Shown piece after piece: positions 3,193 through 59,296 of a DNA stretch of 64,000 nt. The stretch spans positions 62,001 through 126,000 of IMG/VR virus record IMGVR_UViG_3300009104_001827, one strand, 5' to 3'. Both the position numbers and the translations under genes were made by a program. The stretch's first letter is position 1, and every line of letters starts with the position of its first letter. The notes beneath the pieces were generated by a model. That model had not been told where the DNA came from and did no database searches. It saw only the letters and a list, made by a program, of their open reading frames with translations.

Positions 3193-3215
3193 GGTGAGTT
3201 CTTTACTATAAATAA

Positions 3216-3270
3216 TACACTTAAAACAAATAAAGATCAAAAAATATTTACCTACCCCGGTTTAAGTGTA
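3216..3270. promoter_or_regulatory. Divergent pair of GTGTA putative late promoters
   Basis: TACACTTAAA (3216-3225) and TTTAAGTGTA (3261-3270) form an inverted pair between divergent genes. Confidence 0.6.
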
Positions 3271-3279
3271 AAGATATCT

Positions 3280-5670: not shown

Positions 5671-5679
5671 ACTATTAAA

Positions 5680-8667
5680 TTAATATTTATATGGGTCTTG
5701 TTTACCCTTTAGTTCTTCTATCTCAGACTTGAGTTCTTTTATTGCTTCTACTAATAGGGGAACTATTTTTTGATAGTCTACCATCTTGTAGTCTGAGTCG
5801 GGAAGGGCTTTAACGACCTGTGGGAGCACTTTTTCTAGCGATTGGGCCGAAAGACCTACCTGTTCCTCACCTGTGATGCCTACCTCTTTAGCGGCGTCAT
5901 TCCAGTCGAATGAGAAGCCTTCGAGCGAAGCGACCTTGTCGAGTGCGTTGTCAATTTTATTGGTGTTAGTTTTTAACCTATCATCCGAAGCATTATTCAT
6001 GGCCACTACGTCGCCATCGGCGATTATGCTTTGCCCGTCGTTATTTTTACCGTGGACCATTAGTATGGCATCGGAACCGTTGCCTGTTGTGGTGCCAATA
6101 GCGAGCGATGCTTCGCTGAAGTCTAGATCACCAGCGGGAATTTCCCCTGCGTTCACGGACACTGTTAATGTATCTTCCCAAGTACAAACCGTATCAATCC
6201 CCGTTCCTCCAAGAAGTTTTAAAGTGTTGTCGTGCGCTATGGTTTGAATAGTCGCAACTGCGTCTCCTCGAATTTTAAATGTTGTATCCTGACTTGTTCC
6301 TGCGGATATGACTCCCCAGCCAGGAACTCCGTTTGCGTCTGTCTTCCAAACTTTATCCGCATTATTAGTGCCTGGCGCACTGACATAGCCTTCTACTGTC
6401 GCAGTGTTAAGTTTCCATGTGTCAGTAGTTTTATATCCAGAATCATTTGACCATTGAGATATATTACCACTTTTATTTGTAAATGTTTGAGTATTAGATG
6501 CTGTGGTTGTTCCTGTATTTGTTGTATAACCCTTGCCATTCGTCAACTGATTATTGTTAGTTGGAATAGTTGTAGAGTTAAATGCATTAGAACCAAATGT
6601 AAATGTTTGATCATAACTAGTACCCCCGCTTACAGAAAATGTAAGAGTATTACCATTTTTAGTTATGCCATCTAAATAGTAATTTGCGCTAGTGGTACCA
6701 GCAGCGTCGTCTCGCCAGGCTGGATTGCCACTGCCGTCTGTTTTCCAGACCTTATTGGCTACATTGCCAGGCGCAGATACAAAACCATCTGCATTTTTAC
6801 TGTTCGCGACTCCAGCTGTATGCGTGCCTATTTTAACGGTGCCATCTGACTCGATGGTCATTCTAGTGGTATTATTCGTTTGAATTGTCAAATCGTGATT
6901 CGTAACCGTTCCGATTTGAGCTTCAGTTCCTGCCGTGGCATGATCCGTTATAGGGTTGATTTTGAAATTTACGGTTCCATCGGAAACATTAAGACGATGA
7001 CTTGGCAAATCAGCAGTCCCGATTCCGACGTTGCCGCCAGCACGAATAGTCATTGCTGTTGCATTATTTGTGTCGTCACGGAACAACAGTGAGTCAACTC
7101 CTGCGCCGCCAGTGTTTCCCCCTTCATTATATATTGTCCAACCGTTTCCTTCGTGGTCATGCAACATCAGATGCGAGTCCTCGCCGTCTGCGTCTGCCTT
7201 AACCTTGATGGAAGGATTACTGCCCTCGATATGTAGTTTACTACTAGGCTGATCAGTCCCGATTCCGACTTTGCCGTCATGGGTGATACGCATTTTTTCT
7301 AGACGATTAGGTTGTGCGCTTGTTCCTTCGTCTGTACCAAATACCAAAGAACTATATCGTGCGTTTGCTTGATCCTGAACCGAACCAATCCATGAATATC
7401 TACCAAAGCCGTTAGATGGTGTTTTAAGGTGAAACGCCAATCCTACGTTCTGACTGGCGCCGTCACCAGCCAATGAATTGGTGAGTACCAATGAAGTATT
7501 GACGGTTTGTAACGAACCTGAGTATTGAAGTGTAGACTCTGTAGAAACGTTAAGTGGGGCATTTGGCTGATCAGTCCCGATTCCGACGTTGCCGTCGGTG
7601 TCTATAAGGAATCTCGTGGCAGATATCGCAGTGGGGGTACTCGGACTTAATGTCGATCCTTCCGCAATTTGAAATGCTTGTGATCCATCTTTTATACCCA
7701 TTGTATATCGGACTCCACCCATATCTGTAAATGCCAAGTCCGCATCACCTACACCATCTGCTCCATTTTGGATTTCAAGTTTTGCACTGGGATTATCAGT
7801 CCCGATTCCGACGTTGCCGGCCGAATCAATAGTTATGCGGTCTGCGCCATTGGTTCGCAAGCCCATCGCGTTAGTGGCATTGTAGTATGTTACTCTCCCA
7901 ATAGACTTGTTATCTGGGTCACCAAGCAATAGAGCGGCGTTGTCGCCGGCATGTGAAGTTATGCTAATGTAGGCGTTGCTGCCGGATATGACTTTTTCAA
8001 CCGAAAGACTATAAAGCGGAGAAGTAGTCCCGATTCCGACTTTCTTATTAAATGACCATGCATTAGGGGTGGCGTAATAATTTAAAGATGCTCCTGCGCC
8101 ATCCACGGTTAGGCCTGCTCCATTGGCGGCTGATGCATTGGCCGCTCCTTTTGCTACTGTAATATTTAAATCTTCTACATCAAGTGTTGCTGTGTTTAAA
8201 GTTGTGGTCGTTCCATTAATGGTGAGGTTGCCAGAGACCGTAAGGTTATTGTAGAAACGAGCGTCGCCTTGGTCGTCGATCCTTAATGCGGTGTTGGTGA
8301 TGCCGCTTGCATAGTTATTGGACGTGCCGAAGTGAAGCTCGGTGCCGCTACCGGAGATTTTGGCTGCAATTCGCGCGATAGGTTTTGTGAAATCATTATA
8401 AGAAAAGTCCAGGGCGTTATAGTCGCCGGATTGATAATCGCTGTTCCTCAGCACAAATCCGCCCAAAGACGTGCCCGTGAATGAGGTAAGGTCATCATCG
8501 GTATGCACGGTCACCCGAGGCTTCCCGTCGCTCCCGGCATACGTATCAACAAACGTTATAGGCCCGAGATCGGATGTAATAGACATAGGGTTGCTAGCAT
8601 TACCGAAGGTGATCTCGTCTGATACGCTGTCGAATTTAAAAAGATTTTGAAAGTTTATTGAGCTCAT
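5680..8667 (-). CDS. Long tail fibre with GNVGIGT modules and C-terminal peptidase S74 intramolecular chaperone
   Basis: Repeated G[NK]VGIGT junctions. The C-terminus SDDRLKTN..IDNALDKV..LEGFSFDWN..VGLSAQ..EKVLPQVV..VDYQKIVPLLVEAIKEL fits S74. Confidence 0.9.
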   Translation of the reverse strand: MSSINFQNLFKFDSVSDEITFGNASNPMSITSDLGPITFVDTYAGSDGKPRVTVHTDDDLTSFTGTSLGGFVLRNSDYQSGDYNALDFSYNDFTKPIARIAAKISGSGTELHFGTSNNYASGITNTALRIDDQGDARFYNNLTVSGNLTINGTTTTLNTATLDVEDLNITVAKGAANASAANGAGLTVDGAGASLNYYATPNAWSFNKKVGIGTTSPLYSLSVEKVISGSNAYISITSHAGDNAALLLGDPDNKSIGRVTYYNATNAMGLRTNGADRITIDSAGNVGIGTDNPSAKLEIQNGADGVGDADLAFTDMGGVRYTMGIKDGSQAFQIAEGSTLSPSTPTAISATRFLIDTDGNVGIGTDQPNAPLNVSTESTLQYSGSLQTVNTSLVLTNSLAGDGASQNVGLAFHLKTPSNGFGRYSWIGSVQDQANARYSSLVFGTDEGTSAQPNRLEKMRITHDGKVGIGTDQPSSKLHIEGSNPSIKVKADADGEDSHLMLHDHEGNGWTIYNEGGNTGGAGVDSLLFRDDTNNATAMTIRAGGNVGIGTADLPSHRLNVSDGTVNFKINPITDHATAGTEAQIGTVTNHDLTIQTNNTTRMTIESDGTVKIGTHTAGVANSKNADGFVSAPGNVANKVWKTDGSGNPAWRDDAAGTTSANYYLDGITKNGNTLTFSVSGGTSYDQTFTFGSNAFNSTTIPTNNNQLTNGKGYTTNTGTTTASNTQTFTNKSGNISQWSNDSGYKTTDTWKLNTATVEGYVSAPGTNNADKVWKTDANGVPGWGVISAGTSQDTTFKIRGDAVATIQTIAHDNTLKLLGGTGIDTVCTWEDTLTVSVNAGEIPAGDLDFSEASLAIGTTTGNGSDAILMVHGKNNDGQSIIADGDVVAMNNASDDRLKTNTNKIDNALDKVASLEGFSFDWNDAAKEVGITGEEQVGLSAQSLEKVLPQVVKALPDSDYKMVDYQKIVPLLVEAIKELKSEIEELKGKQDPYKY
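7015..8040 (-). repeat. Interspersed 21-bp direct repeats (plus strand AGTCCCGATTCCGACGTTGCC) in fibre gene 5680-8667
   Basis: Perfect copies at 7015, 7573 and 7798; one mismatch at 7255; 15-nt partial copy at 8026. Confidence 0.95.
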
Positions 8668-8680
8668 GTTGTTTTTTCTG

Positions 8681-11600
8681 TTATGGTCCGCTTACCAATG
8701 CAAATTGCGGAGGCTTCGTGTCGTGGGGCGTATTGCCGAAGACTTCTAAATGCACGTAAAATTTAGCGTGAGGGGTACCGCCTGAATCAATGTAGGGGCC
8801 TGGTAAAGTTATCGGATATCTCACAATAGCGAAATCGTATGGGGAGGACCCATCCTTCAATGGTCCTGCATGGTCAAACGAATCTGAAACATAGGACGTT
8901 ACTTCCCCTAAGGTAAAGACTCCTGTTGCTGCTTCCATTAGGGGTTCTCTATACGTGTCAGGTGGGTTGTTGCCCTGTTCTCCATCGCTCTCAAAGTAAA
9001 GAAATGATTCATCTATGATTGATCCTCTATTAATTGTTCTTGCGGAATAACTGCCATGATCGAGCCTTGTCCCGACAATTCTAAGTCTGTAATGTGTTCC
9101 GAGCAGATCATTATCAAATATCAAATGAAAATAATACGTTCCTCCTGAGGGTTGCTCAAAATAGTGAACCCCGGAGTATTCTTTCTTTGCTGAAGAGCTA
9201 TAGTCCAGGGTGAGTATCGTGGCGCCCGCTCCGTGTTGTGTCGCCTCGCTCGGAAGATAACCTCTCGTTTCAATATCCCCATAAGCGAGTAACTTTGCAG
9301 TTCCCGCCCAGGCTCCCCAGGGTCCCCCGGGAGTTCCGATTTTGACGTTGCCGTCGGACGTGATTGTCATAGAAGGATCGTCTTTGGTTCTATCTATACC
9401 AGTTGACCCGCTTTTTGTTCCTGTATAAAACTTAAAACCAAACCCGCCAACATTATCGATGCTTTCATAATAATTCGCGATTTTTGAAAACACAACATCC
9501 GTTTGACCAAAACCCAAAGAAATCTCTTGGTCGGCTACCACGCCTGGGTCGTCCACGGTTAATGCTAGGGCAATTGGGCTTGTATTCTCAGGGCCAGCGA
9601 CAATGCTGGTTTTGAAATTAGGACTCTTAGTCCCGATTCCGACGTTGCCGCTTTCATCAATAACAAATTCCTCGGTGGTTGCATCAGTTCCATAGACGGC
9701 AAATCTACTTGTTCCGTCAACTAACCCAATCCATTTACTATTAATGTCAGTATCGGTAAACTGAATCAGTGGAGACGCCCCGTCATTCTCGACTTGTATA
9801 CTCCCCTTTACATCCAAAGTGTGTGATGGCGAAGAAGTCCCGATTCCGACGTTGCCGGTAGATCTCTCTAGAAATAACTGGTCGTACCAGCCTCCTATCG
9901 CAGGGTACGGTGCCCCGCTGTTCGCTTCGGTGGTTGAAACGAATCTTGTAAAGTTAAGGTTTCTGTCTGCTCCCCCGTCGAACTGGAGCCTCATCCATTC
10001 CCCGTGGACTGAATTGCCAAAGCCAAGTTCCGCGTGATCGTCGTGATGTATGTGAATGCCAGACCCATGAACATCTAGTGGGGCATCTGGCGAATCAGTC
10101 CCAATTCCGACGTTGCCGTTGTGTTTAATTGTCATTCGGGTGGCTGCCGCACTCACAAGCGTGATCTCTCCGCCGCTAGTATAATCTCCATCCCCTACAG
10201 AGGCATCCAAATAGAAGTTATTAGAATCTTCAACTGTTATAACAAAGGTTCCGTTTGCCGCTTCATTCCCTTGAACCCCTGCGATTTTAACTCTGTTTCC
10301 TGTACTTAACCCGTGGTTTGCGGCAGTAATTTTAATATGCGAAGTATTGGTTGCGTTCGTTAGCGCCATTGGGCCGCCACTGTTCCATTGGTCGGTGTTA
10401 TTCTCGTTAGTTGTCGTAAGAAATTCGATTGTTCCGTCATCGGCGCCAGACTGGCCCTGCGCCATCCCTCCGCCTTTGCACCCCATTCCGATCGCAGCTA
10501 CAATATCTGGGTCTTCGCTTTGCCCCCAATTCATCGGGGAGCAGTTAATGTATTTAAAGATGTTTCCGCCCACCCCATCAACAGGAGCGCTGCCCGCTTG
10601 GTATCCGCCAAGCCAAATGTTGTCTATTGCTGCGTCTCCAAAAACCTGTAGTGTTTTTTGTGGATTCGGGGTCCCGATTCCGACATTGCCGTCAGTGTCT
10701 ACGGTGAATCCGTTTGGATTTGTTGTTATTCCACCGCCATCATTATATATACCGACTCCAAGATGAAATCCATTACTATCCGCACCCATCCACGCAGAAC
10801 CTGTATTGGTGTTTGATCTTCCCAATTTGAGTTGACGACCAGTATCTTTTCCTTCTAGATCTAATAAAGTGTCTGGCCCAGAAGTCCCGATTCCGACGTT
10901 GCCTGTATTATCTATCCAGACCCGCTCAGCACCTGCCGTCCTAAAAGAAAGATCGTCTTCATTGTGATCGTAGGTTATCCCTCCACGGAATCTATCTGAA
11001 ATACCTGCTCCAGAGTTCGTGCCGTCTGCGAAATATAAATTTCCGCGAGAGGTTGATTCGCTGGCAATCGTTATTCCCGCACCCGTGTCAGTACCCTTTA
11101 CTACAAGCTCTCTCGCCTCACCATCATAACTTCCGGGCGAATCAGTTCCGATGCCGACTTTGCCCGCCACCGTCATCGATGTGCCTGTATCTGCTGGCTT
11201 TAAATAGTATGGTGAGTACCCGGACTCAGTACCTGTCCAGTTAACGTTGCGAGACCCATAAAAAGTATCTGCAAAGAGCGCGTCGCCGGGTTCTGTGTTG
11301 GGGGTATTGGCGTTCCAGGCAATCGTTACTCCTGTAGGTGTATTCCAGAATTTATATTCATCGGAATTACTCCAGTTCACCCCGGTCGCAATTCTTTTGG
11401 TACCTGAAGATAGAGAGGTAATCTTTACTCTCACTCCGGCGTAATTTTTAAGATCTAAATAGACGGGTAACACCGCGACATCATATGCCCCGATATTTAC
11501 CGTGCTATCGCTAATGTCGCTGTCTCCGGCCTTGGGCAGGCGAATTCTAAAAGAACCTGCGTTTGGAACTGAATGTGATTCTAAAATCTTAAGCGCATAG

Positions 11601-13000
11601 TCCCTGCTGCCGGGGTCATCTAAGTCGCCGCCGGCTGTACTTCCATCATTTGCCGTATCTAAAAATGTATGACACAGGCTATATTTTACATATTCGCCTG
11701 CGTTCTGGTAGTCTGACCAAACTTCAATGATGAAGGCCGAGCCTTCATCTCCAGTTGATTCGTTGTCGTCGTCTATCTCCGTTGGGTATGTAAACTCAAG
11801 GATTTTATATTCCTTTGAGGTATTGGTGACTTTAATATATCCCGAATATAAGACTTCTTCGCCAGCAATACTAAGCATGTCTCCGCCCAGGGTTAGCTGT
11901 CCGTCAATTGTAAGGTTTCCACCCGTAAGTCCCGAGCCTGGATCGTTCTGTTGTAAAAATGCATGGCCGTATTGGTCTAGCGTGAAAAACGATGTATTTC
12001 TCGTGCCCAGCGTTAAGCTATGCGCAGTCGTTGTTCCTATGTCTAGGGTATCTGTTGTCGCATTAATGTTTAACTTACCCTCGATGTTTTCGCTTCTATC
12101 CGTAAGCATGAGGTTAACCTTCTCGTCCCCTGAGATCTCAACGTGACTCGTACTGTTAGTATAGGAGCGATTCACCTTGCCCATCGTTATGCCAGCATTA
12201 GGCGTAACCTTAAATTGAATGTCTGTCCCCCAGGTCGCTGAGTCGACAGATTTGATTTCAATGCCCGCTGTATCTGGGTTGCTAATTAATAGCCGGTTGT
12301 CGGCGCTATATGAAATTGTCGCCCCACTGTCGTCCGAGGAATCACTTGCAAGCGAACCTATTCCATAATCTCCAGAACTATCCTGAAAGAAAATGGATGT
12401 ATCGTTCGCTAATAGCATGTTCCTTGTTAGCTGTAGTTGCTCTTCCGGAAGAATTGTAAGATTTGCCGTACCGGTACCCCCTTGCGCTCCTGCAGTGACA
12501 GTAAAAACCTCACCGATAGTATTGGAGGGTGACCCAAAGACTGTAAAGTCTGTGTCGGCCCCACCTGCACCATCATTGATTGAGGCAATGGTATATGTTT
12601 TGCCTTCAGTCAGGTTGCCCGCAGAGACGATAGGGCCTCTCCCCATGCCTATTCCGACGTTTCCTCCATGGGGATTGTCTCCGCGAATGTAAAGTACTGA
12701 GGCGTCATCATCTTGAATATCTAATATTGCCTCTTGTCCTTTTTGGTTGATGACCACGGCGGGACCCGTCCCGTCATTTGTAACTAAAAGCTGTTCTGAG
12801 GTTTGGGTATCTGTATCAAGAATTGTATGTGTGCCCTCGACTAAAAGTTCGGGAACCCTTAATTTGGTCTTAATTGAAAATTCGTTCCCTGCGGTAGACG
12901 AATCGCTAGAATCTCCCGTATATTGAAAAGGGGAATCTCCGAGCTCTTCGAATGTATTATCTGCCTTTTTTCTTACTAAATATATATCGTTTGTGGCCAT
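8681..13000 (-). CDS. Long tail fibre protein with GNVGIGT modules (1439 aa)
   Basis: About eight G[NK]V[GK]IG junctions and an FCCH-like insert (ITAANHGLSTGNRVKIAGV). It sits in the fibre cluster. Confidence 0.8.
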   Translation of the reverse strand: MATNDIYLVRKKADNTFEELGDSPFQYTGDSSDSSTAGNEFSIKTKLRVPELLVEGTHTILDTDTQTSEQLLVTNDGTGPAVVINQKGQEAILDIQDDDASVLYIRGDNPHGGNVGIGMGRGPIVSAGNLTEGKTYTIASINDGAGGADTDFTVFGSPSNTIGEVFTVTAGAQGGTGTANLTILPEEQLQLTRNMLLANDTSIFFQDSSGDYGIGSLASDSSDDSGATISYSADNRLLISNPDTAGIEIKSVDSATWGTDIQFKVTPNAGITMGKVNRSYTNSTSHVEISGDEKVNLMLTDRSENIEGKLNINATTDTLDIGTTTAHSLTLGTRNTSFFTLDQYGHAFLQQNDPGSGLTGGNLTIDGQLTLGGDMLSIAGEEVLYSGYIKVTNTSKEYKILEFTYPTEIDDDNESTGDEGSAFIIEVWSDYQNAGEYVKYSLCHTFLDTANDGSTAGGDLDDPGSRDYALKILESHSVPNAGSFRIRLPKAGDSDISDSTVNIGAYDVAVLPVYLDLKNYAGVRVKITSLSSGTKRIATGVNWSNSDEYKFWNTPTGVTIAWNANTPNTEPGDALFADTFYGSRNVNWTGTESGYSPYYLKPADTGTSMTVAGKVGIGTDSPGSYDGEARELVVKGTDTGAGITIASESTSRGNLYFADGTNSGAGISDRFRGGITYDHNEDDLSFRTAGAERVWIDNTGNVGIGTSGPDTLLDLEGKDTGRQLKLGRSNTNTGSAWMGADSNGFHLGVGIYNDGGGITTNPNGFTVDTDGNVGIGTPNPQKTLQVFGDAAIDNIWLGGYQAGSAPVDGVGGNIFKYINCSPMNWGQSEDPDIVAAIGMGCKGGGMAQGQSGADDGTIEFLTTTNENNTDQWNSGGPMALTNATNTSHIKITAANHGLSTGNRVKIAGVQGNEAANGTFVITVEDSNNFYLDASVGDGDYTSGGEITLVSAAATRMTIKHNGNVGIGTDSPDAPLDVHGSGIHIHHDDHAELGFGNSVHGEWMRLQFDGGADRNLNFTRFVSTTEANSGAPYPAIGGWYDQLFLERSTGNVGIGTSSPSHTLDVKGSIQVENDGASPLIQFTDTDINSKWIGLVDGTSRFAVYGTDATTEEFVIDESGNVGIGTKSPNFKTSIVAGPENTSPIALALTVDDPGVVADQEISLGFGQTDVVFSKIANYYESIDNVGGFGFKFYTGTKSGSTGIDRTKDDPSMTITSDGNVKIGTPGGPWGAWAGTAKLLAYGDIETRGYLPSEATQHGAGATILTLDYSSSAKKEYSGVHYFEQPSGGTYYFHLIFDNDLLGTHYRLRIVGTRLDHGSYSARTINRGSIIDESFLYFESDGEQGNNPPDTYREPLMEAATGVFTLGEVTSYVSDSFDHAGPLKDGSSPYDFAIVRYPITLPGPYIDSGGTPHAKFYVHLEVFGNTPHDTKPPQFALVSGP
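9332..11164 (-). repeat. Same 21-bp repeat family in fibre gene 8681-13000
   Basis: Perfect copies at 9629, 9836 and 10883; one mismatch at 10097; two at 10670; three at 9332 and 11144. Confidence 0.95.
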
Positions 13001-13010
13001 CTTATTGTAT

Positions 13011-13015
13011 TACAC
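13011..13015 (-). promoter_or_regulatory. GTGTA putative late promoter
   Basis: Minus strand AATAGGTGTAATACAATAAG-ATG (10 nt to ATG 13000). Confidence 0.55.
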
Positions 13016-13027
13016 CTATTTTAAATA

Positions 13028-16000
13028 TTACCATTGACTTATTGGAAATCTTTTCCACGCTACTAGACTATTGTTGGTTCCATCGCTATCCTGTATGCAG
13101 ATATATATGAAGCTGTCATTGTAGATTAGCGTGCCTTTGTCTCCCGCCGAATATGTATGTGCCGGTTCTACTACCGTGTGTCCATCATGATCGTCCCCAA
13201 TCTTTGGAATGACAGGGTAAGTTTCAAATACATCGGTCGCAAAAAGCTTACCGGAAATTTTCACATCACCGGCAACATGTAGTTTAAATTTATCTTGGGT
13301 AACCGGAGATAGATCCACCGAATTAACATTAATTCCAACGTTCGCATCAGCGGAGAATAAAACATCATTTCCTGCTGGCGCACCAGTGTTCGGGTGCGTA
13401 TTGGTCGTACCCTCAAAGGTTACGAGTTTCTTGTCTCCAGCTCCGATCATTACGCCCTTGCCTACGGTACTGGACGTGATCGCTAAATCCTGGCCAGAAC
13501 TCTGAATATAGCCGAGGCTTGTCCCGTATAGACCAAGATAGGATGCGCTTAGATTTTCAGAGTGACCTATTTGAAGGTGGTCCGTCCCGCCCCTCTTTTG
13601 CAGCTGAAGCGTGGCCCGCTGATCTTGAGGGCCGGTCACATCAATCCATTCGGGCTCGCCCTCGTTGCCTTGAGTTGAGCCGGGTCCCCAATTTGCCGTA
13701 CCTGGCGCAGAGTGGTCGTGGTCGCCGGCCCAGTATGAAGTGCTGTCGCCGTCTTGACTTCCATTCTTTCTCCACGATTTTCCGTCGTATTGAACATAGG
13801 TCGGTGAATCCGTGTCTTCGTCGTCATAATACGCGATTAACGCATCGTAATTAGGTAGTCCGTTCGGATCAACGCCTCCGGCGGCATGAATCCTTAATCC
13901 TTCATTTCTATCTACAGACTGCTCGACTGTAAGTGGAAAAACTGGCTCGTCGGTTCCAATGCCTACATCGCCTTCTTGGGTTATATGAAAATTGTTTGTG
14001 GTTGTTGCTCCCTCTGTATGTCCAATACTTAATATTTCTAGTGTGTCACTCGGGTCTGTTGGGCTATTCTCGTTCTGAAAAACTTTGAAGTGTCCGTTTA
14101 GCCCAGTTCTTGTTCCCAGTACTAGGTTGTCTTTTACTGTTGCGTCTCCCGCGACATCAAGTAGAGTGCCCGGCGTCGGCGTTCCGATTCCAAATTTTCC
14201 CGCGCCATTAATGAAAGAGTCTAGTGTTGTGTCTAGGGCTATTTTTTCCGCGAGACCACCAGCGTCGTCTGCCAATGCAAGTCTAGACCTTGAGCTGAAT
14301 GTTTGGATTTTTGCAAGCGAGGTTGCTACTCCTGCGTCTGTCAGCAGTAGGTTTCCTTCAATCTCTAGCTTGGAGTTTGGTGAAGTTGTGCCTATTCCAA
14401 CGTTGCCCGAGTCTAAGATTGTGACCGCCGTTGTGTCTGTAACTTTAGATACTGCCTCAATCGAATGAGTGGAGAACATGGTCATAAGTATGACAAAGTG
14501 TGGGTTGGTTGATGGCGACGAGTTCGCTACCGTTTTCTCTTCTCCCATGACACGGATTTTGTCTCCGACATTCAGGAGGCTAGCTATGTTCTCTCCATAA
14601 AGCATATTGAGCGCGGAGACCCCTGTTGTCGCCCCCGTATTCCAGTCGCCAATTAGTTCGGTGCTTGTTGACCAATTATCTGTGCTCTGAGCGCCCACTC
14701 CGGGGTAGGTGGCGGTTCCGCCGTCTGTTCTTTCCCAGCGGTTCGTTCCTGAGTTCCAAAATATGTAGTCTGGGTCACCTGCCGTCAACCGGAAGTAAAG
14801 CGGCTTACCGTTGACGTAATTGTCTTCAGGGATTGGATCCGCCAACAGGACATATGTCAACCCCTCTAGGGTGACCGAATAATATTCTGGGATTTCCGCA
14901 ACAAGCGGCCCACTGTTTCCTTGAAGCTGATCTAACGCTGAGCTTTTGAACTCAAGCCCTTTATTCGCTGCGGTACCTTTGGTTCCTGTGATTAATCTTT
15001 TTGTTCCGGTATTGTTTTCTAAAATTATTCCGTGCTCTTCGTCCGCACTTTCTTTGATGTGAAGATTTTCTTCTGGCAAAGAGGCGCCGATTCCGATGTT
15101 TCCGTTAGGTATAACGGTTAAATGTTTAGTAAAAGAGGAGGTAACCCTGCCAATGTCCAAATGCCCGTTGGAGTCGGAGCAAAACCTCCAATTGCTGCCA
15201 TCGAACGCACCTCCGCTAGAGGTGTTATTTAGGTAGAAGCTTGTTCCTTGAGAGGCATCTGATTCCACTTGAAGATCTCCGTCTGGATCGCTGGTTCCAA
15301 TACCTACACTGCCTCCTGGGAATATTGTTTTCGTTGTGCTACTGCCGCCTAAGAATAGTGGGACCCCGCCGCGAACGGTGTCTTGCGAAGCAATGTAAAC
15401 CCCCGCCGGAGGATCGTTGTTCGATGCCGAGGTATATTCTCCTATTAAGGCATCTCCGGTTCCTCCGTATATTATCGAACTGGAATCGGAAGTTTTACCC
15501 ACTCTTAAATATCCTTCTACATCTAATGATTGTCTCGGGGCAAGCACTCCTATTCCTATCTCTCCGCCATCCTCAATGGTTATTCCCTTTGGGGATGCGT
15601 CGCCTGCAATATTCAATCGGGCCTTATTGTTGTCGTTGTCATAGCTTAGTATGACCCTTTTGTCTGCCGCAGTTGCGCTGCCGACAGATAATGTAGAAAG
15701 TCCTGTGGTTACTCCCTCCCCTATGATCGCATCCGCCTTTATGGAAACCGCATCATTAAAGGTGGACTGGCCTGAAACATTCAAGGACTGCTTTAGGGTT
15801 GAATCTCCTTCAACATTTAAGGTTCCCTTTAGGTCTGAATATCCCTCAACTATTAAATTGGAGTCTAGTGATGTCTTGTAATCATCAACATTATGAAGGG
15901 TATTGTCTGCCCAGGGACTCGTGGCGCTTCCCGTTCCGCCTGAGAAGTCTGCCCCCGTTACGGCTCCCGAGTTGGTAAGATTAAATGTGACCGTGTGATT

Positions 16001-17812
16001 CGTTGTATCCCCTGCCGTCGCAGTTGTGATGTTAACATTTTCCTGGCTGGAGCTTGCCTCAAAGTTGGGGTGCCCATTAATCTCTGCCGCTAAATTTGTT
16101 GCAGTCGCGCTATCATCTGCGCCTATAGCGAAACTATTCGTACCTGCCACGGCCGTGAAAGTGGCGCCACCAAACTGAATTGTATCTCCCGATACTAAAT
16201 TGTTTGGCTGGGCAATTGTAAGTTGCGTGGTAGCCTTGGTTGACGCAACCCCGGGCTCATCGGAGGTAAGGGTGGGGCCTGAAGCCTTCCACGCCTTTGC
16301 AGAGCCGTCGTCCGGCCACTTGACCTCGGCACCCTGAGCGTATGGTGCAGCGTTGCTCCAAGCTGTCAGCCCGTCGGGAGAAACTCCTTCTTGGAATTTA
16401 ATATTAAAAATATCACCTTTAACCGTCAAGTTCTTTTGTATGGTAACATCTTCTTTGAAGGTTGCGACACCGTCCACTATAAGTGTGCCACCTAGGCCTG
16501 TATTCTCGGAAACCTGAAGCTCGTCATTGGCGTAAAGAGCTGAATCTACGTTAACCTCTCCGTCGACCTGGAGATCTGAACTCATTTCGCAGTCGCCCAC
16601 TAAATAACTTTTTTGATTTACATTAAGCTGATCCGCAACTACAAGACTAGAGTCAAGTGAAGTGTCTCCTTTTACAGTAAGGTTTCTCCCTATCGTAAGG
16701 TCTTTGTTCGCATTGACAATTAATCCTGCTCCGGTTCCAACTTTCGTGTCTGTACCATCTCCCCAAATTAAGTCGGCGGTAGTGGTTTTTAATGCACTCG
16801 TATCGGATATGGAGACATGGCCATCAATGGTTACCTGTTCGGTTTGGTCTTCTGTATTAACGCTTAGCTTGCCAACAAGAAAGGTGTCTTTCTCTGACTT
16901 GAGGTCATTTTTGAGAAAAGACTTCCCGTCTACTATTATTGTTCCCTTGGGTTGCCCCGCAAAGGAAACACTTTCGGCTCCTACATGTAAATTGGAATCA
17001 AATTGTGTGAGATATTGGTCTACGTCGTGGAGGGTATTATCTATCCAGGGGGAAACTGCGCTCCCGGCGCCGCCTGTAAAGTCAGTTTTACTCCACGCCG
17101 AAGCGTCCGCGTAAAGCGTGATAACTGTATTTCCTGTAACTCCTGCCGTAACCTGAGCAATATTAACATTGGCGCCATCTGATGTGGCTGCGAACGCAGC
17201 ATGAGCATTAATTGCAGTAGCAATATTCGTTGCTGTTGCGTCGTTTGTTCCCCCAATGGTCCAATCTGTTCCTTCGACAAAATTGACCACATTTGAAGCT
17301 GCGTCAACAAGCGCTATACTGTCGTTATTAACTATTAGGTTATACTGAGCGACGGTTACTTGTCCCGCCGCCGCAACACTCGCAACCCCGGGCTGGTCAT
17401 CCGCTCGAGTCGCTGCTGAAGCCTTCCAGACTTTTCCTGCGTGGGTGACCTCGTCATTTGTATTGTATACGGCAGCAGACCAGGGGCTTAAGTTTGGATT
17501 GTCTGGGGCCGTGCCTGCCTCAAATTTTAAATTAAATATATCACCTTTAACTGTTAAATGTCCGTCTATGCTGACATCCGATTCAAAGACCGCATTATCC
17601 TCAAAGGTTTTTGCTCCACCTATGGACTGTGTTCCGGTAATAAGTACCGAATGATCCAAGATGGAGGTCTTGAAATTTTTATACTGTATTGTCTCATTTT
17701 TTACCTTAGACCTGGCTAGCAGGAGCATGGCTGCATCATCTGCGTTTTGTGAAGCGCCGTCTGAAAGTAAAGAGGTCTTTTCGTCTAAATCTGAAATTCT
17801 ACTATTTGGCAT
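13028..17812 (-). CDS. Tail fibre protein (proximal type), with internal duplication and CBM-like modules (1594 aa)
   Basis: Likely start is MPNSRISDLDEKTSL (ATG 17812). Also shows TGTQSIGGAKTF, V.GD/L.V beta-solenoid repeats, six GxxGIG junctions and a C-terminal GDKGTLIYNDSFIYIC...WKR trimer-tip motif. Confidence 0.8.
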   Translation of the reverse strand: MPNSRISDLDEKTSLLSDGASQNADDAAMLLLARSKVKNETIQYKNFKTSILDHSVLITGTQSIGGAKTFEDNAVFESDVSIDGHLTVKGDIFNLKFEAGTAPDNPNLSPWSAAVYNTNDEVTHAGKVWKASAATRADDQPGVASVAAAGQVTVAQYNLIVNNDSIALVDAASNVVNFVEGTDWTIGGTNDATATNIATAINAHAAFAATSDGANVNIAQVTAGVTGNTVITLYADASAWSKTDFTGGAGSAVSPWIDNTLHDVDQYLTQFDSNLHVGAESVSFAGQPKGTIIVDGKSFLKNDLKSEKDTFLVGKLSVNTEDQTEQVTIDGHVSISDTSALKTTTADLIWGDGTDTKVGTGAGLIVNANKDLTIGRNLTVKGDTSLDSSLVVADQLNVNQKSYLVGDCEMSSDLQVDGEVNVDSALYANDELQVSENTGLGGTLIVDGVATFKEDVTIQKNLTVKGDIFNIKFQEGVSPDGLTAWSNAAPYAQGAEVKWPDDGSAKAWKASGPTLTSDEPGVASTKATTQLTIAQPNNLVSGDTIQFGGATFTAVAGTNSFAIGADDSATATNLAAEINGHPNFEASSSQENVNITTATAGDTTNHTVTFNLTNSGAVTGADFSGGTGSATSPWADNTLHNVDDYKTSLDSNLIVEGYSDLKGTLNVEGDSTLKQSLNVSGQSTFNDAVSIKADAIIGEGVTTGLSTLSVGSATAADKRVILSYDNDNNKARLNIAGDASPKGITIEDGGEIGIGVLAPRQSLDVEGYLRVGKTSDSSSIIYGGTGDALIGEYTSASNNDPPAGVYIASQDTVRGGVPLFLGGSSTTKTIFPGGSVGIGTSDPDGDLQVESDASQGTSFYLNNTSSGGAFDGSNWRFCSDSNGHLDIGRVTSSFTKHLTVIPNGNIGIGASLPEENLHIKESADEEHGIILENNTGTKRLITGTKGTAANKGLEFKSSALDQLQGNSGPLVAEIPEYYSVTLEGLTYVLLADPIPEDNYVNGKPLYFRLTAGDPDYIFWNSGTNRWERTDGGTATYPGVGAQSTDNWSTSTELIGDWNTGATTGVSALNMLYGENIASLLNVGDKIRVMGEEKTVANSSPSTNPHFVILMTMFSTHSIEAVSKVTDTTAVTILDSGNVGIGTTSPNSKLEIEGNLLLTDAGVATSLAKIQTFSSRSRLALADDAGGLAEKIALDTTLDSFINGAGKFGIGTPTPGTLLDVAGDATVKDNLVLGTRTGLNGHFKVFQNENSPTDPSDTLEILSIGHTEGATTTNNFHITQEGDVGIGTDEPVFPLTVEQSVDRNEGLRIHAAGGVDPNGLPNYDALIAYYDDEDTDSPTYVQYDGKSWRKNGSQDGDSTSYWAGDHDHSAPGTANWGPGSTQGNEGEPEWIDVTGPQDQRATLQLQKRGGTDHLQIGHSENLSASYLGLYGTSLGYIQSSGQDLAITSSTVGKGVMIGAGDKKLVTFEGTTNTHPNTGAPAGNDVLFSADANVGINVNSVDLSPVTQDKFKLHVAGDVKISGKLFATDVFETYPVIPKIGDDHDGHTVVEPAHTYSAGDKGTLIYNDSFIYICIQDSDGTNNSLVAWKRFPISQW

Positions 17813-17843
17813 AACGATTGGGGAACTAAAGTTCTCTATATTA

Positions 17844-17883
17844 TACACATAAAAAACGGCATGAAGATTTTTTTGTTAGTGTA
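17844..17883. promoter_or_regulatory. Divergent pair of GTGTA putative late promoters
   Basis: TACAC at 17844-17848 (for 17812, minus strand) and GTGTA at 17879-17883 (9 nt to ATG 17893). Confidence 0.6.
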
Positions 17884-17892
17884 AGTAGGAGT

Positions 17893-40728: not shown

Positions 40729-40729
40729 C

Positions 40730-41773: not shown

Positions 41774-42113
41774 ACTTAATGAACGAATTCTCGCCGACGC
41801 AAGGAACTTAGCCAAATCCAATCCGGGTGAGGAGGCTGCCGGAATCCTCTTTGAGTTCGATGAGGTATTTTTTTATCCCATGAGAAATATCGCTCGCGAT
41901 AAGACCACCTCTTTTGAGCTAGACAAAAGGACTATGCTTCTTAAGGATCGTATCTACGCTATATTCCATTCTCACCCCGAGGGTGACGCCTATCCATCCG
42001 ACTGGGACAAAGGGGCGTCGGAGGCGCTAGGGGTTCCGTTTTTGATCTACAGTTTGCTCTACGACAATTTTTTATTTTTTGACAAGGGAAAGTGTAATCC
42101 CGTACAGGAATAA
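41766..42113 (+). CDS. Tail assembly protein K-like JAB/MPN metalloprotease (no NlpC/P60 domain)
   Basis: EEAAGIL...IFHSHPEGDAYPSDWD matches JAMM E..HxH..S..D. Lies between L and I/J. Confidence 0.85.
   Translation: MPKLNERILADARNLAKSNPGEEAAGILFEFDEVFFYPMRNIARDKTTSFELDKRTMLLKDRIYAIFHSHPEGDAYPSDWDKGASEALGVPFLIYSLLYDNFLFFDKGKCNPVQE
42092..42096 (+). promoter_or_regulatory. GTGTA putative internal late promoter for the I-J gene
   Basis: AAGTGTAAT 19 nt upstream of ATG 42116, followed by GGAATAAGG. It lies inside the K gene. Confidence 0.4.
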
Positions 42114-42115
42114 GG

Positions 42116-58500: not shown

Positions 58501-59296
58501 CCACCTTTAGGAGGGCTCTTGCTTCTGCTGCGGGTACATCGTCCCAGCTAGACCAATTTGAGGCTGCTTCGTTCTTGTACTTGTCATCTCTCCACCACTC
58601 TCTCAGGACCTCCTTGAAGTCAAGGAAGCTATGGCAATTGAGTTTATTTTGAGCGTTGGTTTCTAAAATGGAGGAGGGGGTTAGCGCGGGAGAAGTCTGC
58701 GCCATGGGTTTCCCTTTGCTCTTATTAATTTCGTCGTCCCCGACGATGTGGACATTTAGGAAATTTCTGATGCACCTTACGAACGCTCGATTGCAGGCGA
58801 TTGTTTCGAGGAAAATTTGTCCAAAATCGCTGGTATTGTTGATTGTGGCGTTTGCCATGTCTTGGAATCTTACATGTTCCCCGCCGGTTTCGTAATTTGG
58901 TATAAATGTTATTGTGCAGGTGACTGCGACGTGCTCTTCGCTACATTTTTCCGTATGAAATGAGACGTCTGAGAATCCTCTTAGTCTAGCTAGTTCTTTA
59001 ATTCCGCTAAGCTTAATTAGAAGTTGATGATCTTGGAGGCCCTCTACTGTGCTAGGCATGGCTTGATTTCTTGTTTTAAACCAGTCCCTGTTGGGAAATA
59101 GATGACTGTCTCCTATCATTGCTCTCCAGTCGATAGATCCATCCTCATGAAAAACGTATTGAACGTTCTTGAGCAATCCATGCGAGTCCCTCTGGAACAG
59201 TGACGGTCCGAAGCTATTATCGATAGCTGAGTCGGTTATTGTGGTCGAACCTTCCGTGGTTGTTTCTGAATTAGTTGTTTTCTTTTTTCTTGGCAT
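58490..59296 (-). CDS. Putative Rad52/Sak-like single-strand annealing protein
   Basis: LLIKLSGIKELA...VAVTCTITF...FQDMANAT..ETIACNRAFVRCIRNFLNV.IVGDDEI resembles the A.TRA..RA.R...EE signature of Rad52-superfamily SSAPs. Confidence 0.5.
   Translation of the reverse strand: MPRKKKTTNSETTTEGSTTITDSAIDNSFGPSLFQRDSHGLLKNVQYVFHEDGSIDWRAMIGDSHLFPNRDWFKTRNQAMPSTVEGLQDHQLLIKLSGIKELARLRGFSDVSFHTEKCSEEHVAVTCTITFIPNYETGGEHVRFQDMANATINNTSDFGQIFLETIACNRAFVRCIRNFLNVHIVGDDEINKSKGKPMAQTSPALTPSSILETNAQNKLNCHSFLDFKEVLREWWRDDKYKNEAASNWSSWDDVPAAEARALLKVVNA

What the first reader, a model, noticed from the sequence alone, without database searches (positions are those of the whole stretch)
7015..11164. Coding cassette array: tail-fibre modules joined by a codon-invariant 21-bp DNA core, a candidate receptor-binding module-shuffling system
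Seen: the GNVGIGT junction in two adjacent fibre genes is encoded by exactly GGC AAC GTC GGA ATC GGG ACT at six sites (7015, 7573, 7798, 9629, 9836, 10883). Near-identical copies lie at 7255, 10097, 10670, 9332 and 11144, with a partial copy at 8026. The peptide has 6144 possible synonymous encodings, and each of its three Gly positions keeps a different fixed codon, so codon bias does not explain this. The cores are 207-573 bp apart, and the in-frame modules between them show no obvious DNA similarity. Internal control: the third fibre gene (13028-17812) encodes the same peptide with four synonymous differences (14387-14407), and its other junctions are more diverged still. Established: GNVGIGT-type repeats are common in phage fibres. 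Inference: the constraint acts on the DNA, so the core may be a recombination site through which in-frame modules are inserted, deleted or swapped between genes or phages, like a repeat-spacer array that is itself protein. The recombinase could be site-specific or the Rad52-like SSAP at 58490-59296.
Basis: partly seen in the sequence, partly recalled or inferred. Interest (0 to 1): 0.85.

Follow-up and report, generated by a model that had tools for sequence, protein, structure and literature searches.

The report
Codon-locked joints in phage tail fibres
Two neighbouring tail-fibre genes of a marine jumbo phage are built from unrelated modules joined by one 21-base DNA sequence that never varies even where the genetic code would allow it, and comparison with natural variants and related phages shows that modules are lost, replaced and imported by recombination at these joints.

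Summary
GGCAACGTCGGAATCGGGACT (minus strand) occurs six times exactly and five times with 1-3 changes in two adjacent fibre genes (5680-8667, 8681-13000). No shuffle gave a match. Synonymous sites are almost fixed inside the core (302/357 same-residue pairs share the codon, 108 expected). In the flanks they are random (101/299, 92 expected).

The core encodes the invariant GNVGIGT junction between trimeric beta-helix modules of an S74/MAT-type fibre.

Recombination at the cores is supported by four lines:
- A near-identical contig lacks exactly one module, with the crossover inside the core.
- k=31 unitig breaks in two runs match a second core-to-core deletion.
- In a ~95% identical Tara Oceans phage whole module arrays are replaced, and 4 of 12 boundaries lie in a core.
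- An unrelated phage shares a 150-nt near-identical tract that stops at a core.

The same 21-mer, against local codon usage, bounds unrelated modules in other marine phages (GC 34-54%).

I found no site-specific recombinase, no inverted sites and no silent cassette store. ORF 58490-59296 has a Rad52/Sak-like fold (Z about 7). Best reading: short-homology recombination joints kept identical by concerted evolution. This is a new, extreme variant of motif-mediated fibre mosaicism.

The parts
5680..8667 (-). Fibre gene g1 (995 aa). It has an N-terminal anchor, four modules joined by cores, a distal tip and a C-terminal S74 intramolecular chaperone.
   Evidence: ORF and translation. Pfam Peptidase_S74 at residues 894-953, E 8e-14. 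PDB sequence match to Bdellovibrio MAT fibre Bd2133 (8OND), E 3.5e-10. Homotrimer of residues 270-485 scored 0.89 against a best control of 0.00.
8681..13000 (-). Fibre gene g2 (1439 aa). It has a long N-terminal part, then an array of seven modules bounded by eight cores (11164 down to 9332), then a C-terminal domain.
   Evidence: One module carries an E1_FCCH-like barrel at residues 893-949 (Pfam E 2e-6, below the curated cut-off).
13028..17848 (-). Fibre gene g3 (1606 aa). It serves as an internal control: its junction motifs are diverged at the DNA level (4-10 mismatches to the core).
   Evidence: It is 93.5% identical to the Tara relative except for one island, 14383-14188, that begins 26 nt past one core and ends inside another.
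7798..7818 (-). Core g1a, exact 21-mer.
   Evidence: Similarity to the Tara relative ends at 7797, directly after this core. A Logan unitig break overlaps 7795-7824.
7573..7593 (-). Core g1b, exact 21-mer.
   Evidence: It is the upstream crossover partner of the 318-nt deletion in L136/P0004. A Logan unitig break overlaps 7565-7594.
7255..7275 (-). Core g1c, 1 mismatch (AAA, Asn to Lys).
   Evidence: It is the downstream partner of the 318-nt deletion. The 150-nt near-identical tract shared with phage contig L148 ends 3 nt past it.
7015..7035 (-). Core g1d, exact 21-mer.
8026..8046 (-). Partial core (KKVGIGT). The last 15 nt are identical to the core.
   Evidence: A diverged patch relative to the Tara relative (8035-7928) begins inside it.
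6823..6843 (-). Degenerate junction motif GTVKIGT (7 mismatches), at the end of the g1 array.
   Evidence: Similarity to the Tara relative resumes 17 nt downstream, at 6806.
11144..11164 (-). Core g2b (3 mismatches), the first core of the g2 array.
   Evidence: The 96% identity to the Tara relative ends inside it at 11146, and the relative carries a slipped GGAATC duplication there (GIGIGT).
10883..10903 (-). Core g2c, exact 21-mer.
10670..10690 (-). Core g2d, 2 synonymous mismatches.
10097..10117 (-). Core g2e, 1 synonymous mismatch.
9836..9856 (-). Core g2f, exact 21-mer.
   Evidence: Contigs of three independent assemblies end or diverge at it: L136 starts at 9849, L159 diverges after 9836, and an X2 contig has a loose end at 9836.
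9629..9649 (-). Core g2g, exact 21-mer.
9332..9352 (-). Core g2h (3 mismatches, GNVKIGT), the last core of the g2 array.
7252..7401 (-). 150-nt tract with at most 2 mismatches to an otherwise diverged phage contig (L148/L005, GC 0.51). It is the footprint of a recent exchange that ends at core g1c.
14180..14200 (-). g3 junction motif GKFGIGT. The boundary of the replaced island lies inside it.
14387..14407 (-). g3 GNVGIGT with 4 synonymous differences. The replaced island begins 26 nt downstream.
58490..59296 (-). Candidate Rad52-superfamily single-strand annealing protein (268 aa).
   Evidence: No Pfam or PHROG hit. Its family has 717 representatives. AF2 model pLDDT 91. Structural matches: RAD52 Z 7.3 over 118 residues, Mgm101 6.4, phage 80alpha Sak 6.2, Red-beta 5.7. 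The protein atlas gave a weak lead to Sak/Rad52.

Best explanation
The 21-mer encodes the invariant GNVGIGT junction between successive trimeric beta-helix modules of S74/MAT-type tail fibres. The modules have diverged beyond DNA recognition, so the junction is the only stretch where two modules, or two phages, can still pair.

Canonical cores share 21-25 nt of perfect identity. That is about the minimal pairing length reported for phage Rad52-like annealases (23-27 bp) and below that of RecA (31-34 bp). Short-homology recombination at these joints is always in frame and in structural register. It therefore gives viable fibres with a module deleted, replaced or imported from a co-infecting phage.

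The same exchanges, together with heteroduplex repair and the fact that only perfectly matching cores take part, keep the cores codon-identical. This is concerted evolution confined to 21 nt. Cores that mutate drop out of the exchange and decay, as at the ends of the arrays and in g3. A phage-encoded Rad52-like annealase (58490-59296) is the likeliest catalyst.

Shown:
- DNA-level invariance with sharp edges.
- Exchange boundaries in cores in natural sequences.
- The same core in other phages, against their codon usage.

Inferred:
- The enzyme.
- That recombination, rather than another DNA-level function, maintains the identity.
- Any effect on host range.
For: 1. Synonymous identity is 302/357 in the core against 101/299 in the flanks (expected 108 and 92).

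2. L136/P0004, from a third sample, has 1 mismatch in 4.1 kb to the window. It lacks exactly 318 nt between cores g1b and g1c, with the crossover inside the 23-nt identity.

3. In two runs the k=31 unitigs break with overlaps 7565-7594 and 7795-7824. Among all core pairs, only a g1a x g1b deletion of 225 nt predicts both of these 30-mers. That pair has the longest identity, 25 nt.

4. The Tara Oceans relative (L134, 94-97% identical in shared blocks) has the g1 and g2 arrays replaced by modules only 23-33% identical in protein. Four of 12 boundaries lie in or at a core (14191, 11146, ~8035, 7797), and two more lie 17 and 26 nt away. About 5% would be expected by chance. A 6-nt slipped core sits at one junction.

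5. Window module g1b is shared with the unrelated contig L148 (GC 0.51). A 150-nt tract with at most 2 mismatches stops 3 nt after core g1c.

6. Independent pairs show the same pattern. L141 and L148 share one module from core to core. L141 and L154 are 90-98% identical up to and including the first core and unalignable after it.

7. Over all fetched loci, 18 of 70 internal similarity ends lie within 12 nt of a core, against 6.1 expected.

8. The same 21-mer at 0-2 mismatches bounds different modules in marine phage contigs of GC 0.34-0.54. Their local codon usage gives it a probability of 1e-4 to 1e-6 per site. Between phages at about 35% protein identity, codon identity is 67-96% in cores and 36-52% outside.

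9. g3, with diverged cores, is stable between the two related phages. g1 and g2, with canonical cores, were turned over.

10. The MEPS figures come from PMC3945230.
Against: - No raw reads were available. The deletion in L136 could be a small-k assembly misjoin at a 23-nt repeat.
- The second deletion is inferred from unitig ends, not seen as a junction. Contig ends at cores in other assemblies may be technical.
- Eight of 12 boundaries in the closest relative are not at cores, so cores are preferred joints, not the only ones.
- BLAST ends are somewhat drawn to conserved cores.
- The loci with canonical cores were found through one exact match each. That is an ascertainment bias, although it explains only one core per locus.
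- An encoding-blind sample shows a family-wide, position-specific codon consensus (GGC AAC GTC GGT ATC GGG ACG) in phages of very different GC. Gene flow alone may not explain this, and it could point to another DNA- or RNA-level function.
- The annealase assignment rests on Z about 7, which is within the range of chance arrangements.
- The near-identical tract in L148 could in principle be a chimeric assembly.
Confidence: 0.66

Rival explanations
1. The core is a dedicated site-specific cassette system, like a shufflon or an integron. A recombinase would recognise the 21-mer and excise, insert or swap modules.
For: The core is exact, repeated and in frame. The deletion in L136 runs exactly from core to core.
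Against: - All cores are direct repeats, so site-specific action alone would only delete.
- No tyrosine or serine recombinase or invertase family was found in the 20 ORFs scanned.
- There are no orphan cassettes in the window and no further exact cores in the 211-kb contig.
- Crossovers also occur in degenerate cores, in a partial core and out of register by 6 nt. Most array boundaries lie outside cores.
Confidence: 0.05
2. The codon invariance reflects selection on translation or on the mRNA at an invariant structural motif. Candidates are accuracy, pausing for co-translational trimer folding, codon context, or an unknown DNA/RNA element. On this view, recombination at the cores is only a by-product of that identity.
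For: - In an encoding-blind sample of 225 sites, every core codon departs from local usage in the same direction in phages of GC 0.32-0.64. Examples: GGC 110 observed/47 expected, GTC 73/30, GGG 65/24, ACG 90/28.
- Conserved residues from +9 onward follow local usage.
- AAC, ATC, GTC and GGC are C-ending codons of the kind often preferred for accuracy (own knowledge).
Against: - The three Gly positions prefer three different codons, and two favoured codons (GGG, ACG) are rare locally.
- Different lineages fix different alleles: GGA/ACT here, GGT/ACG in L091, AT-rich alleles in L068 and L081.
- There is no Rfam match, no common RNA fold (z -1.45 to +0.77) and no covariation for the GNRA mini-hairpin (43 stems against 37 +/- 3.7).
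- g3 in the same genome encodes the same peptide with other codons.
Confidence: 0.15
3. The modules are recent tandem duplicates. The core merely has not had time to diverge, while the modules diverged fast under diversifying selection.
For: Repeats of one fold in tandem are normally made by duplication. In some other phages the flanks also show raised codon identity (L016, L056, L068).
Against: - Synonymous sites at conserved flanking residues are already random (101/299 against 92 expected).
- Modules are about 25-35% identical in protein and differ in length from 69 to 191 aa, one of them with an inserted barrel.
- The identical core occurs in phages that share only about 35% protein identity.
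Confidence: 0.04
4. The variants are artefacts. The invariant core is real, but the deletions, contig breaks and shared tracts come from assembly or PCR chimeras at a short repeat, and no exchange happens in nature.
For: - L136 is a short contig that starts inside a core.
- Several assemblies break at cores.
- Only contigs, not reads, could be laid.
Against: - The mosaic between the window and the Tara phage is carried by contigs longer than 200 kb assembled independently in 15 records.
- The same pattern recurs in the pairs L141/L154/L155 and L141/L148, which come from other studies.
- Logan's k of 31 exceeds every core identity (21-25 nt), so the unitig branches need real 30-mers.
Confidence: 0.06

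Closest known systems
Motif-mediated recombination in T-even distal tail-fibre and adhesin genes: the His boxes of gp37 and the glycine-rich motifs (GRM) separating hypervariable segments of gp38 (Tetart et al. 1998, cited from memory; Trojet et al. 2011, PMC3157838).
   Same: Short conserved motifs inside a fibre or adhesin gene separate variable segments. Exchanges between phages occur between the motifs and swap segments in frame. The design is read as favouring host-range change.
   Different: - No sequence relation to gp37 or gp38 was detected.
- Here the units are whole 69-191-aa beta-helix modules, in arrays of four and seven modules (up to eight cores per gene).
- The joint is one 21-nt sequence fixed at every synonymous site and shared by phages of very different GC.
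- Module number itself varies.
Linker sequences of the modular theory of phage evolution (Susskind and Botstein 1978; Botstein 1980; own knowledge), and relaxed homologous recombination by Rad52-like recombinases (De Paepe et al. 2014, PMC3945230).
   Same: Short patches of homology between otherwise diverged DNA serve as crossover points. Phage annealases act on short, diverged homologies (MEPS 23-27 bp).
   Different: The linkers here lie inside a coding sequence, are repeated many times per gene, and coincide with a structural junction of the protein.
Shufflon of plasmid R64 (Rci acting on sfx sites) and the invertible fibre segments of Mu (Gin), P1 (Cin) and p15B (Min) (own knowledge).
   Same: Short DNA cores inside an adhesin or fibre gene bound alternative coding segments.
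   Different: Those systems use inverted sites and an adjacent dedicated recombinase, and they switch reversibly within one genome. Here the sites are direct, no such recombinase was found, and the changes are deletions and replacements between genomes.
Cassette systems of antigenic variation: Borrelia vls with 17-bp direct repeats, and Neisseria pilS minicassettes with conserved flanks (own knowledge).
   Same: Short conserved DNA stretches bound variable coding cassettes, and recombination runs through them.
   Different: Those systems draw on a silent cassette archive in the same genome. None exists here, so the donors must be other phages.
Mosaic adhesive trimer (MAT) fibres of Bdellovibrio and S74 phage fibres (Caulton et al. 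2024, PMC10769870; PDB 8OND, 8OML, 8OJN).
   Same: The protein architecture matches: tandem intertwined trimeric beta-helix domains with a recurring Gly-rich junction or capping motif, a variable tip and an S74 chaperone.
   Different: That work describes the proteins. DNA-level invariance of the junction and recombination at it are not mentioned in the passages read.

Membership tests
S74 / MAT-type trimeric beta-helix tail fibre (protein family) | C-terminal S74 intramolecular chaperone / autoprotease domain | tested here: met
   Pfam PF13884 in g1 residues 894-953, E 8e-14, 52 bits against a cut-off of 22. g2 and g3 lack it, as non-S74 MAT members do.
S74 / MAT-type trimeric beta-helix tail fibre (protein family) | Sequence homology of the repeat modules to solved beta-helix fibre domains | tested here: met
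   phmmer of g1 200-640 against PDB chains: 8OND Bd2133 E 3.5e-10, 8OML E 1.6e-5, 8OJN E 1.3e-4. The alignments run through the RMxIxxxGNVGIGTxxPxxKL motif.
S74 / MAT-type trimeric beta-helix tail fibre (protein family) | Intertwined homotrimer | tested here: met
   Three copies of g1 270-485 scored 0.89 in three runs, best of 3 controls 0.00, with about 630 contacts along the whole segment. This may partly reflect the model's memory of like structures.
Shufflon / Gin-Cin-Min invertible fibre segments | Crossover sites in inverted orientation | tested here: not met
   All 11 copies lie on the same strand.
Shufflon / Gin-Cin-Min invertible fibre segments | Adjacent dedicated tyrosine or serine recombinase | tested here: not met
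   No recombinase family was found in 20 ORFs of the window scanned with Pfam, 10 of them also with PHROGs. The two giant ORFs and the ORFs under 120 aa were not scanned. The rest of the 211-kb genome was not available.
Motif-mediated fibre mosaicism (T-even GRM / His-box type) | Conserved short motifs separating variable coding segments | tested here: met
Motif-mediated fibre mosaicism (T-even GRM / His-box type) | Natural or experimental recombinants with exchange points in the motifs | tested here: met
   Comparative evidence only. No experimental cross was done.
Motif-mediated fibre mosaicism (T-even GRM / His-box type) | Homology to gp37 / gp38 | tested here: not met
   Pfam finds only Peptidase_S74, a weak E1_FCCH match and a weak CBM_5_12 match. 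The only hit in the phage record collection is a 192-nt match at 67% to a cyanophage structural protein.
Cassette archives of antigenic variation (vls / pilS type) | Silent donor cassettes in the same genome | tested here: not met
   No copy of the core with 3 or fewer mismatches lies outside g1 and g2 in the window. Only the six exact copies occur in the 211-kb contig.
Rad52-superfamily single-strand annealing proteins (for ORF 58490-59296) | Beta-beta-beta-alpha annealase core resembling Rad52, Sak or Red-beta | tested here: inconclusive
   - Model pLDDT 91, with strands 108-151 followed by helix 158-180.
- VIA-align: RAD52 Z 7.3 over 118 residues, Mgm101 6.4, Sak 6.2, Red-beta 5.7, mixed with dsRBD folds at Z 5-7.
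- Foldseek E 0.04-0.15.
- No Pfam or PDB sequence hit, even with a 56-member profile.
Rad52-superfamily single-strand annealing proteins (for ORF 58490-59296) | ssDNA annealing activity and a partner exonuclease | not testable with these tools
   The neighbouring genes are glycosyltransferases. No exonuclease was identified.

The most novel reading that the evidence does not exclude
The 21-mer is an evolved 'coding linker': a recombination signal kept by selection for exchangeability and shared by a wide pool of marine phages. Through it, any beta-helix fibre module can be moved in frame between genes and phages, possibly with a cognate annealase that favours it. The family-wide, position-specific codon consensus of the GNVGIGT(TS) motif would then be the signature of a pan-phage cassette-exchange standard, not of protein or translation constraints.
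Probability: 0.2. Interest if true: 0.88.

Novelty: new variant of a known kind. Interest (0 to 1): 0.68.

Why it matters
Tail fibres decide which bacteria a phage can attack, and how they diversify so fast is only partly understood.

This locus gives base-level evidence that a structural junction of the protein doubles as the DNA joint for module exchange. The joint is held identical at every synonymous site, and it is shared by unrelated marine phages against their own codon usage.

If confirmed, three things follow:
- The old idea of linker sequences in modular phage evolution becomes directly testable inside one gene.
- There is an explanation for a family-wide synonymous constraint that I found in no paper of the searched library.
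- It would point to natural, register-preserving splice points for building chimeric S74/MAT-type fibres in laboratory phages.

It also warns that metagenome assemblies of such genes break or misjoin at these joints.

Tried and rejected
- RNA element: there is no Rfam match in 5000-18500 at E up to 1. Six core contexts share no fold, with z from -1.45 to +0.77.
- GNRA mini-hairpin (GACG-GCAA-CGTC) across the -1 codon and the core: 43 of 225 sites form it, against 37 +/- 3.7 after shuffling, so there is no covariation.
- Codon bias or translational optimisation as the sole cause: rejected. The three Gly positions use different codons, two favoured codons are rare, and g3 uses other codons.
- Recent duplication: rejected by the random synonymous sites in the flanks.
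- Close relatives in IMG/VR found by protein search: only the window's own contig and a sister contig.
- The phage record collection gave one weak cyanophage hit.
- A search for the predicted g1a x g1b junction in IMG/VR found nothing.
- The exact 21-mer in 185,579 species genomes gave 8 single hits in diverse MAGs, with otherwise heterogeneous cores. These are consistent with chance and were not pursued.
- Two short joints in the laid contigs (7041-7565 in X4, 10690-11136 in X2; side 20-23 nt) do not run core to core and probably come from other organisms. I did not use them.
- The 38-nt unrelated tail after core g2f at the end of scaffold L159 could not be interpreted.
- A strict automatic boundary test (identity of 88% or more, narrow motif) found only 2 of 16 ends at cores, because it missed degenerate cores and the 84% block. 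I replaced it with the broader test.
- Literature: no paper in the searched library holds 'GNVGIGT', and none links tail-fibre repeats with concerted evolution.

Full report
**What is there**

The window comes from a 211-kb viral contig of a marine metagenome (IMGVR_UViG_3300009104_001827). Bases 5680-17848 hold three tandem fibre genes on the minus strand:
- g1, 5680-8667, 995 aa
- g2, 8681-13000, 1439 aa
- g3, 13028-17848, 1606 aa

Lambda-like tail-tip genes lie further on: Phage_min_tail, Phage_tail_L and Phage-tail_3 at 36910-47065.

g1 ends in a Peptidase_S74 chaperone (E 8e-14). Its repeat region matches solved Bdellovibrio 'mosaic adhesive trimer' fibres by sequence (8OND, E 3.5e-10; 8OML; 8OJN). 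Those fibres are intertwined trimeric beta-helix domains with a recurring Gly-rich junction or capping motif (PMC10769870). Three copies of g1 270-485 are predicted to form an extensive trimer (score 0.89, best of 3 controls 0.00).

GGCAACGTCGGAATCGGGACT occurs six times exactly and five times with 1-3 mismatches, all on the minus strand and all in frame as G-N-V-G-I-G-T. Shuffles gave no match. A partial copy lies at 8026-8046, and degenerate junction motifs lie at 6823-6843 and 12644-12664.

With the genome's codon usage this encoding has a probability of about 1.3e-4 per site.

The key control is the flanks. Over the 11 copies, 302 of 357 same-residue pairs use the same codon in the core (108 expected). 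In the 40 flanking codons the figure is 101 of 299 (92 expected). The conserved Ile -4, Pro +9 and Leu +13 use all their codons. The modules are therefore old and saturated at synonymous sites, and the DNA identity has sharp edges. g3 encodes the same peptide with 4 synonymous differences, and its other junctions differ more.

**Natural variants with joints in the cores**

(a) A JGI contig from another sample (L136, protein P0004) has 1 mismatch in 4.1 kb to the window. It lacks exactly the 318 nt between cores g1b and g1c. The crossover lies inside the 23-nt identity GTCGGAATCGGGACTGATCAGCC.

(b) Only Logan contigs (k = 31), not reads, could be laid. In two runs of the source study the contigs break with overlaps 7565-7594 and 7795-7824. 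I enumerated all core-by-core recombinants. Only a g1a x g1b deletion of 225 nt predicts both of these 30-mers. That pair also has the longest perfect identity of all pairs, 25 nt. This is indirect, because the junction itself was not seen.

(c) A Tara Oceans phage is 94-97% identical to the window in shared blocks. It is represented by L133/L134 (207.7 kb; one copy is deposited as a Verrucomicrobiales MAG contig) and was seen in run X5 as a 148.5-kb contig. Its arrays differ:
- Window 7796-6807 (990 nt, three cores) is replaced by 345 nt.
- Window 11145-9274 (six cores) is replaced by about 1.5 kb.
- A 195-nt island differs in g3.

The replacing modules are only 23-33% identical in protein to any window module.

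At base level, the high identity stops inside core 11144-11164, directly after core 7798-7818, inside the partial core 8026-8046, and inside the g3 motif 14180-14200 (100% identical from mid-core onwards). Two further boundaries lie 26 and 17 nt from a core, and six are elsewhere. Core-like elements with a 5-nt margin cover about 5% of the genes, so 4 of 12 has a binomial probability of about 0.003 (my arithmetic). At the g2 boundary the relative carries GGAATCGGAATCGG (GIGIGT). This is a 6-nt out-of-register copy of the core's internal near-repeat, as expected from slipped pairing.

**The same core in other phages**

The exact 21-mer occurs in 7 stretches of other IMG/VR contigs (6 distinct contigs) and in 22 stretches of metagenome contigs. 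Several are marine fibre genes with whole arrays of cores at 0-2 mismatches around different modules:
- L148 = L005, GC 0.51
- L137, GC 0.54
- L152, GC 0.42
- L156, GC 0.45
- L141/L155, GC 0.34-0.39
- L154, GC 0.37

In the low-GC contigs the core's codons are locally rare (GGG 3-9%, GGC 10-14%, GTC 9-16%). The core's probability there is 1e-5 to 1e-6 per site.

L156 is a distant relative of the window phage, 49-58% identical in three conserved proteins. Between the window and L148, L156 or L154, at about 35% protein identity, codon identity at identical residues is 36-52% outside cores and 67-96% inside. Ascertainment explains only one core per locus.

**Module-level exchange between phages**

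Window module g1b, the one missing in L136, is shared with L148 at 79% over 357 nt, running from core to core. Its last 150 nt (7401-7252) have at most 2 mismatches, and the identity stops 3 nt after core g1c. Upstream it decays to 47-80%. That is the footprint of a recent exchange with one end at the core.

L141 and L148 share one module, starting at a core and ending at the next. L141 and L154 are 90-98% identical for 2.4 kb up to and including the first core, are unalignable after it, and are 95% identical again downstream.

Over all fetched loci, 18 of 70 internal similarity ends lie within 12 nt of a core, against 6.1 expected. BLAST ends are somewhat attracted to conserved cores, so this is supportive rather than decisive.

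**How general is it**

I took an encoding-blind sample of GNVGIGT sites: 225 sites in 120 IMG/VR stretches. It shows lineage-specific homogenised alleles:
- L091 has five copies of GGCAACGTCGGTATCGGGACG.
- L068 and L081 have AT-rich alleles.
- Other arrays show no excess over their flanks (L016, L056).

Overall, within-locus codon identity is 0.58 in cores and 0.46 in flanks, with 0.35 expected. Lineage-specific alleles are the hallmark of concerted evolution.

The sample also shows a family-wide, position-specific consensus against local usage:

| Position | Codon | Observed | Expected |
|---|---|---|---|
| G1 | GGC | 110 | 47 |
| N2 | AAC | 126 | 86 |
| V3 | GTC | 73 | 30 |
| G4 | GGT | 115 | 89 |
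| I5 | ATC | 72 | 48 |
| G6 | GGG | 65 | 24 |
| T7 | ACG | 90 | 28 |
| Ser +8 | TCG | 41 | 8 |

Pro +9, Lys +12, Leu +13, Val +15 and Gly +17 follow local usage (p 0.18-0.98). GC3 is raised at all seven codons. The sites are not phylogenetically independent, so the p-values are overstated.

This consensus is not explained by translational optimisation, because three Gly positions prefer three codons, two of them rare. It fits gene flow through the core across a wide pool, perhaps with GC-biased conversion. An unknown DNA- or RNA-level role cannot be excluded. I tested and rejected an Rfam family, a shared RNA fold and a GNRA mini-hairpin.

**Enzyme**

No site-specific recombinase was found in the 20 ORFs scanned. 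All cores are direct repeats, and no orphan cassettes exist in the window or contig.

A confident model (pLDDT 91) finds RAD52 (Z 7.3, 118 residues), Mgm101 (6.4), phage 80alpha Sak (6.2), yeast Rad52 and Red-beta (5.7) among its best matches, mixed with dsRBD folds. Foldseek is weak (E 0.04-0.15), and the protein atlas gave a weak Sak/Rad52 lead. I rate the assignment plausible.

Published minimal pairing lengths are 23-27 bp for Red-beta and 31-34 bp for RecA, and Rad52-like recombinases drive exchange at short, diverged homologies (PMC3945230). The 21-25-nt identities between cores sit at that threshold.

**Conclusion**

The core is the DNA of a structural junction that also serves as the preferred joint for short-homology recombination. 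It yields in-frame module loss, replacement and import, and it is kept codon-identical by those same exchanges.

A dedicated site-specific system is not supported. That the modules bind receptors is untested.

The closest known cases are the conserved-motif exchanges in T-even gp37 and gp38 (PMC3157838) and the linker idea of modular phage evolution. This locus is a more regular and extreme form. I found no description of it in the searched literature.

The main weakness is that no raw reads were available and both deletion variants rest on assemblies. The mosaic comparisons between independently assembled long contigs do not share that weakness.

Noticed in passing
L133 (GCA_002721895.1, PBLV01000063.1, 207.7 kb), compared with window 2726-18859: A GenBank contig filed under a Verrucomicrobiales bacterium MAG is a near-complete relative of this jumbo phage. 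It is 94-97% identical in shared blocks and has the same three fibre genes. It is either mis-binned or a hint at the host.
   Followed up: partly
L134:7873-7900 (orthologue of window core 11144-11164): The relative's core reads GGCAAAGTCGGAATCGGAATCGGGACA (GKVGIGIGT). This is a 6-nt duplication of GGAATC at an exchange boundary, as if pairing had slipped on the core's internal near-repeat TCGGAA/TCGGGA.
   Followed up: partly
IMG/VR loci L010-L129 (225 GNVGIGT sites): There is a family-wide, position-specific synonymous consensus (GGC AAC GTC GGT ATC GGG ACG, then TCG at Ser +8) against local codon usage. It vanishes from codon +9 onward. The cause is not settled.
   Followed up: partly
window 9836-9856; L159 end; L136 start; proteins P0205, P0206: Contigs of several independent assemblies end or diverge at or within about 20 nt of cores. 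L159, a 183-kb scaffold, follows the window up to the last base of core g2f and then has 38 unrelated AT-rich bases. Such fibre genes are assembly breakpoints.
   Followed up: partly
window 10153-10323 (g2 residues 893-949): One module of g2 carries an inserted small barrel that weakly matches the E1 FCCH domain (E 2e-6, below the Pfam cut-off). The modules are therefore not all of one plain type.
   Followed up: no
window 25476-34574 and 47068-58500: Two giant ORFs (3032 and 3810 aa) flank the lambda-like tail-tip genes at 36910-47065. They are presumably the tape measure and a central fibre or host-contact protein. I did not scan them.
   Followed up: no
window 59271-63833: Two glycosyltransferase-like genes (GT9-like at 59271-60455, GT1-like at 60446-62338) and a trypsin-like peptidase (62892-63833) lie next to the annealase candidate.
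   Followed up: no
window 6114-6515 and 8265-8574: Two further islands of g1, in the N-terminal part and in the distal tip before the S74 chaperone, differ between the window and the Tara relative without any core at their edges. The tip island is a likelier receptor-specificity determinant than the shaft modules.
   Followed up: no
runs X7 and X9: Two marine metatranscriptome runs hold 6-9% of the sampled words of 6900-11300. Parts of these fibre genes, or of relatives, are therefore present in RNA data. I did not examine them.
   Followed up: no
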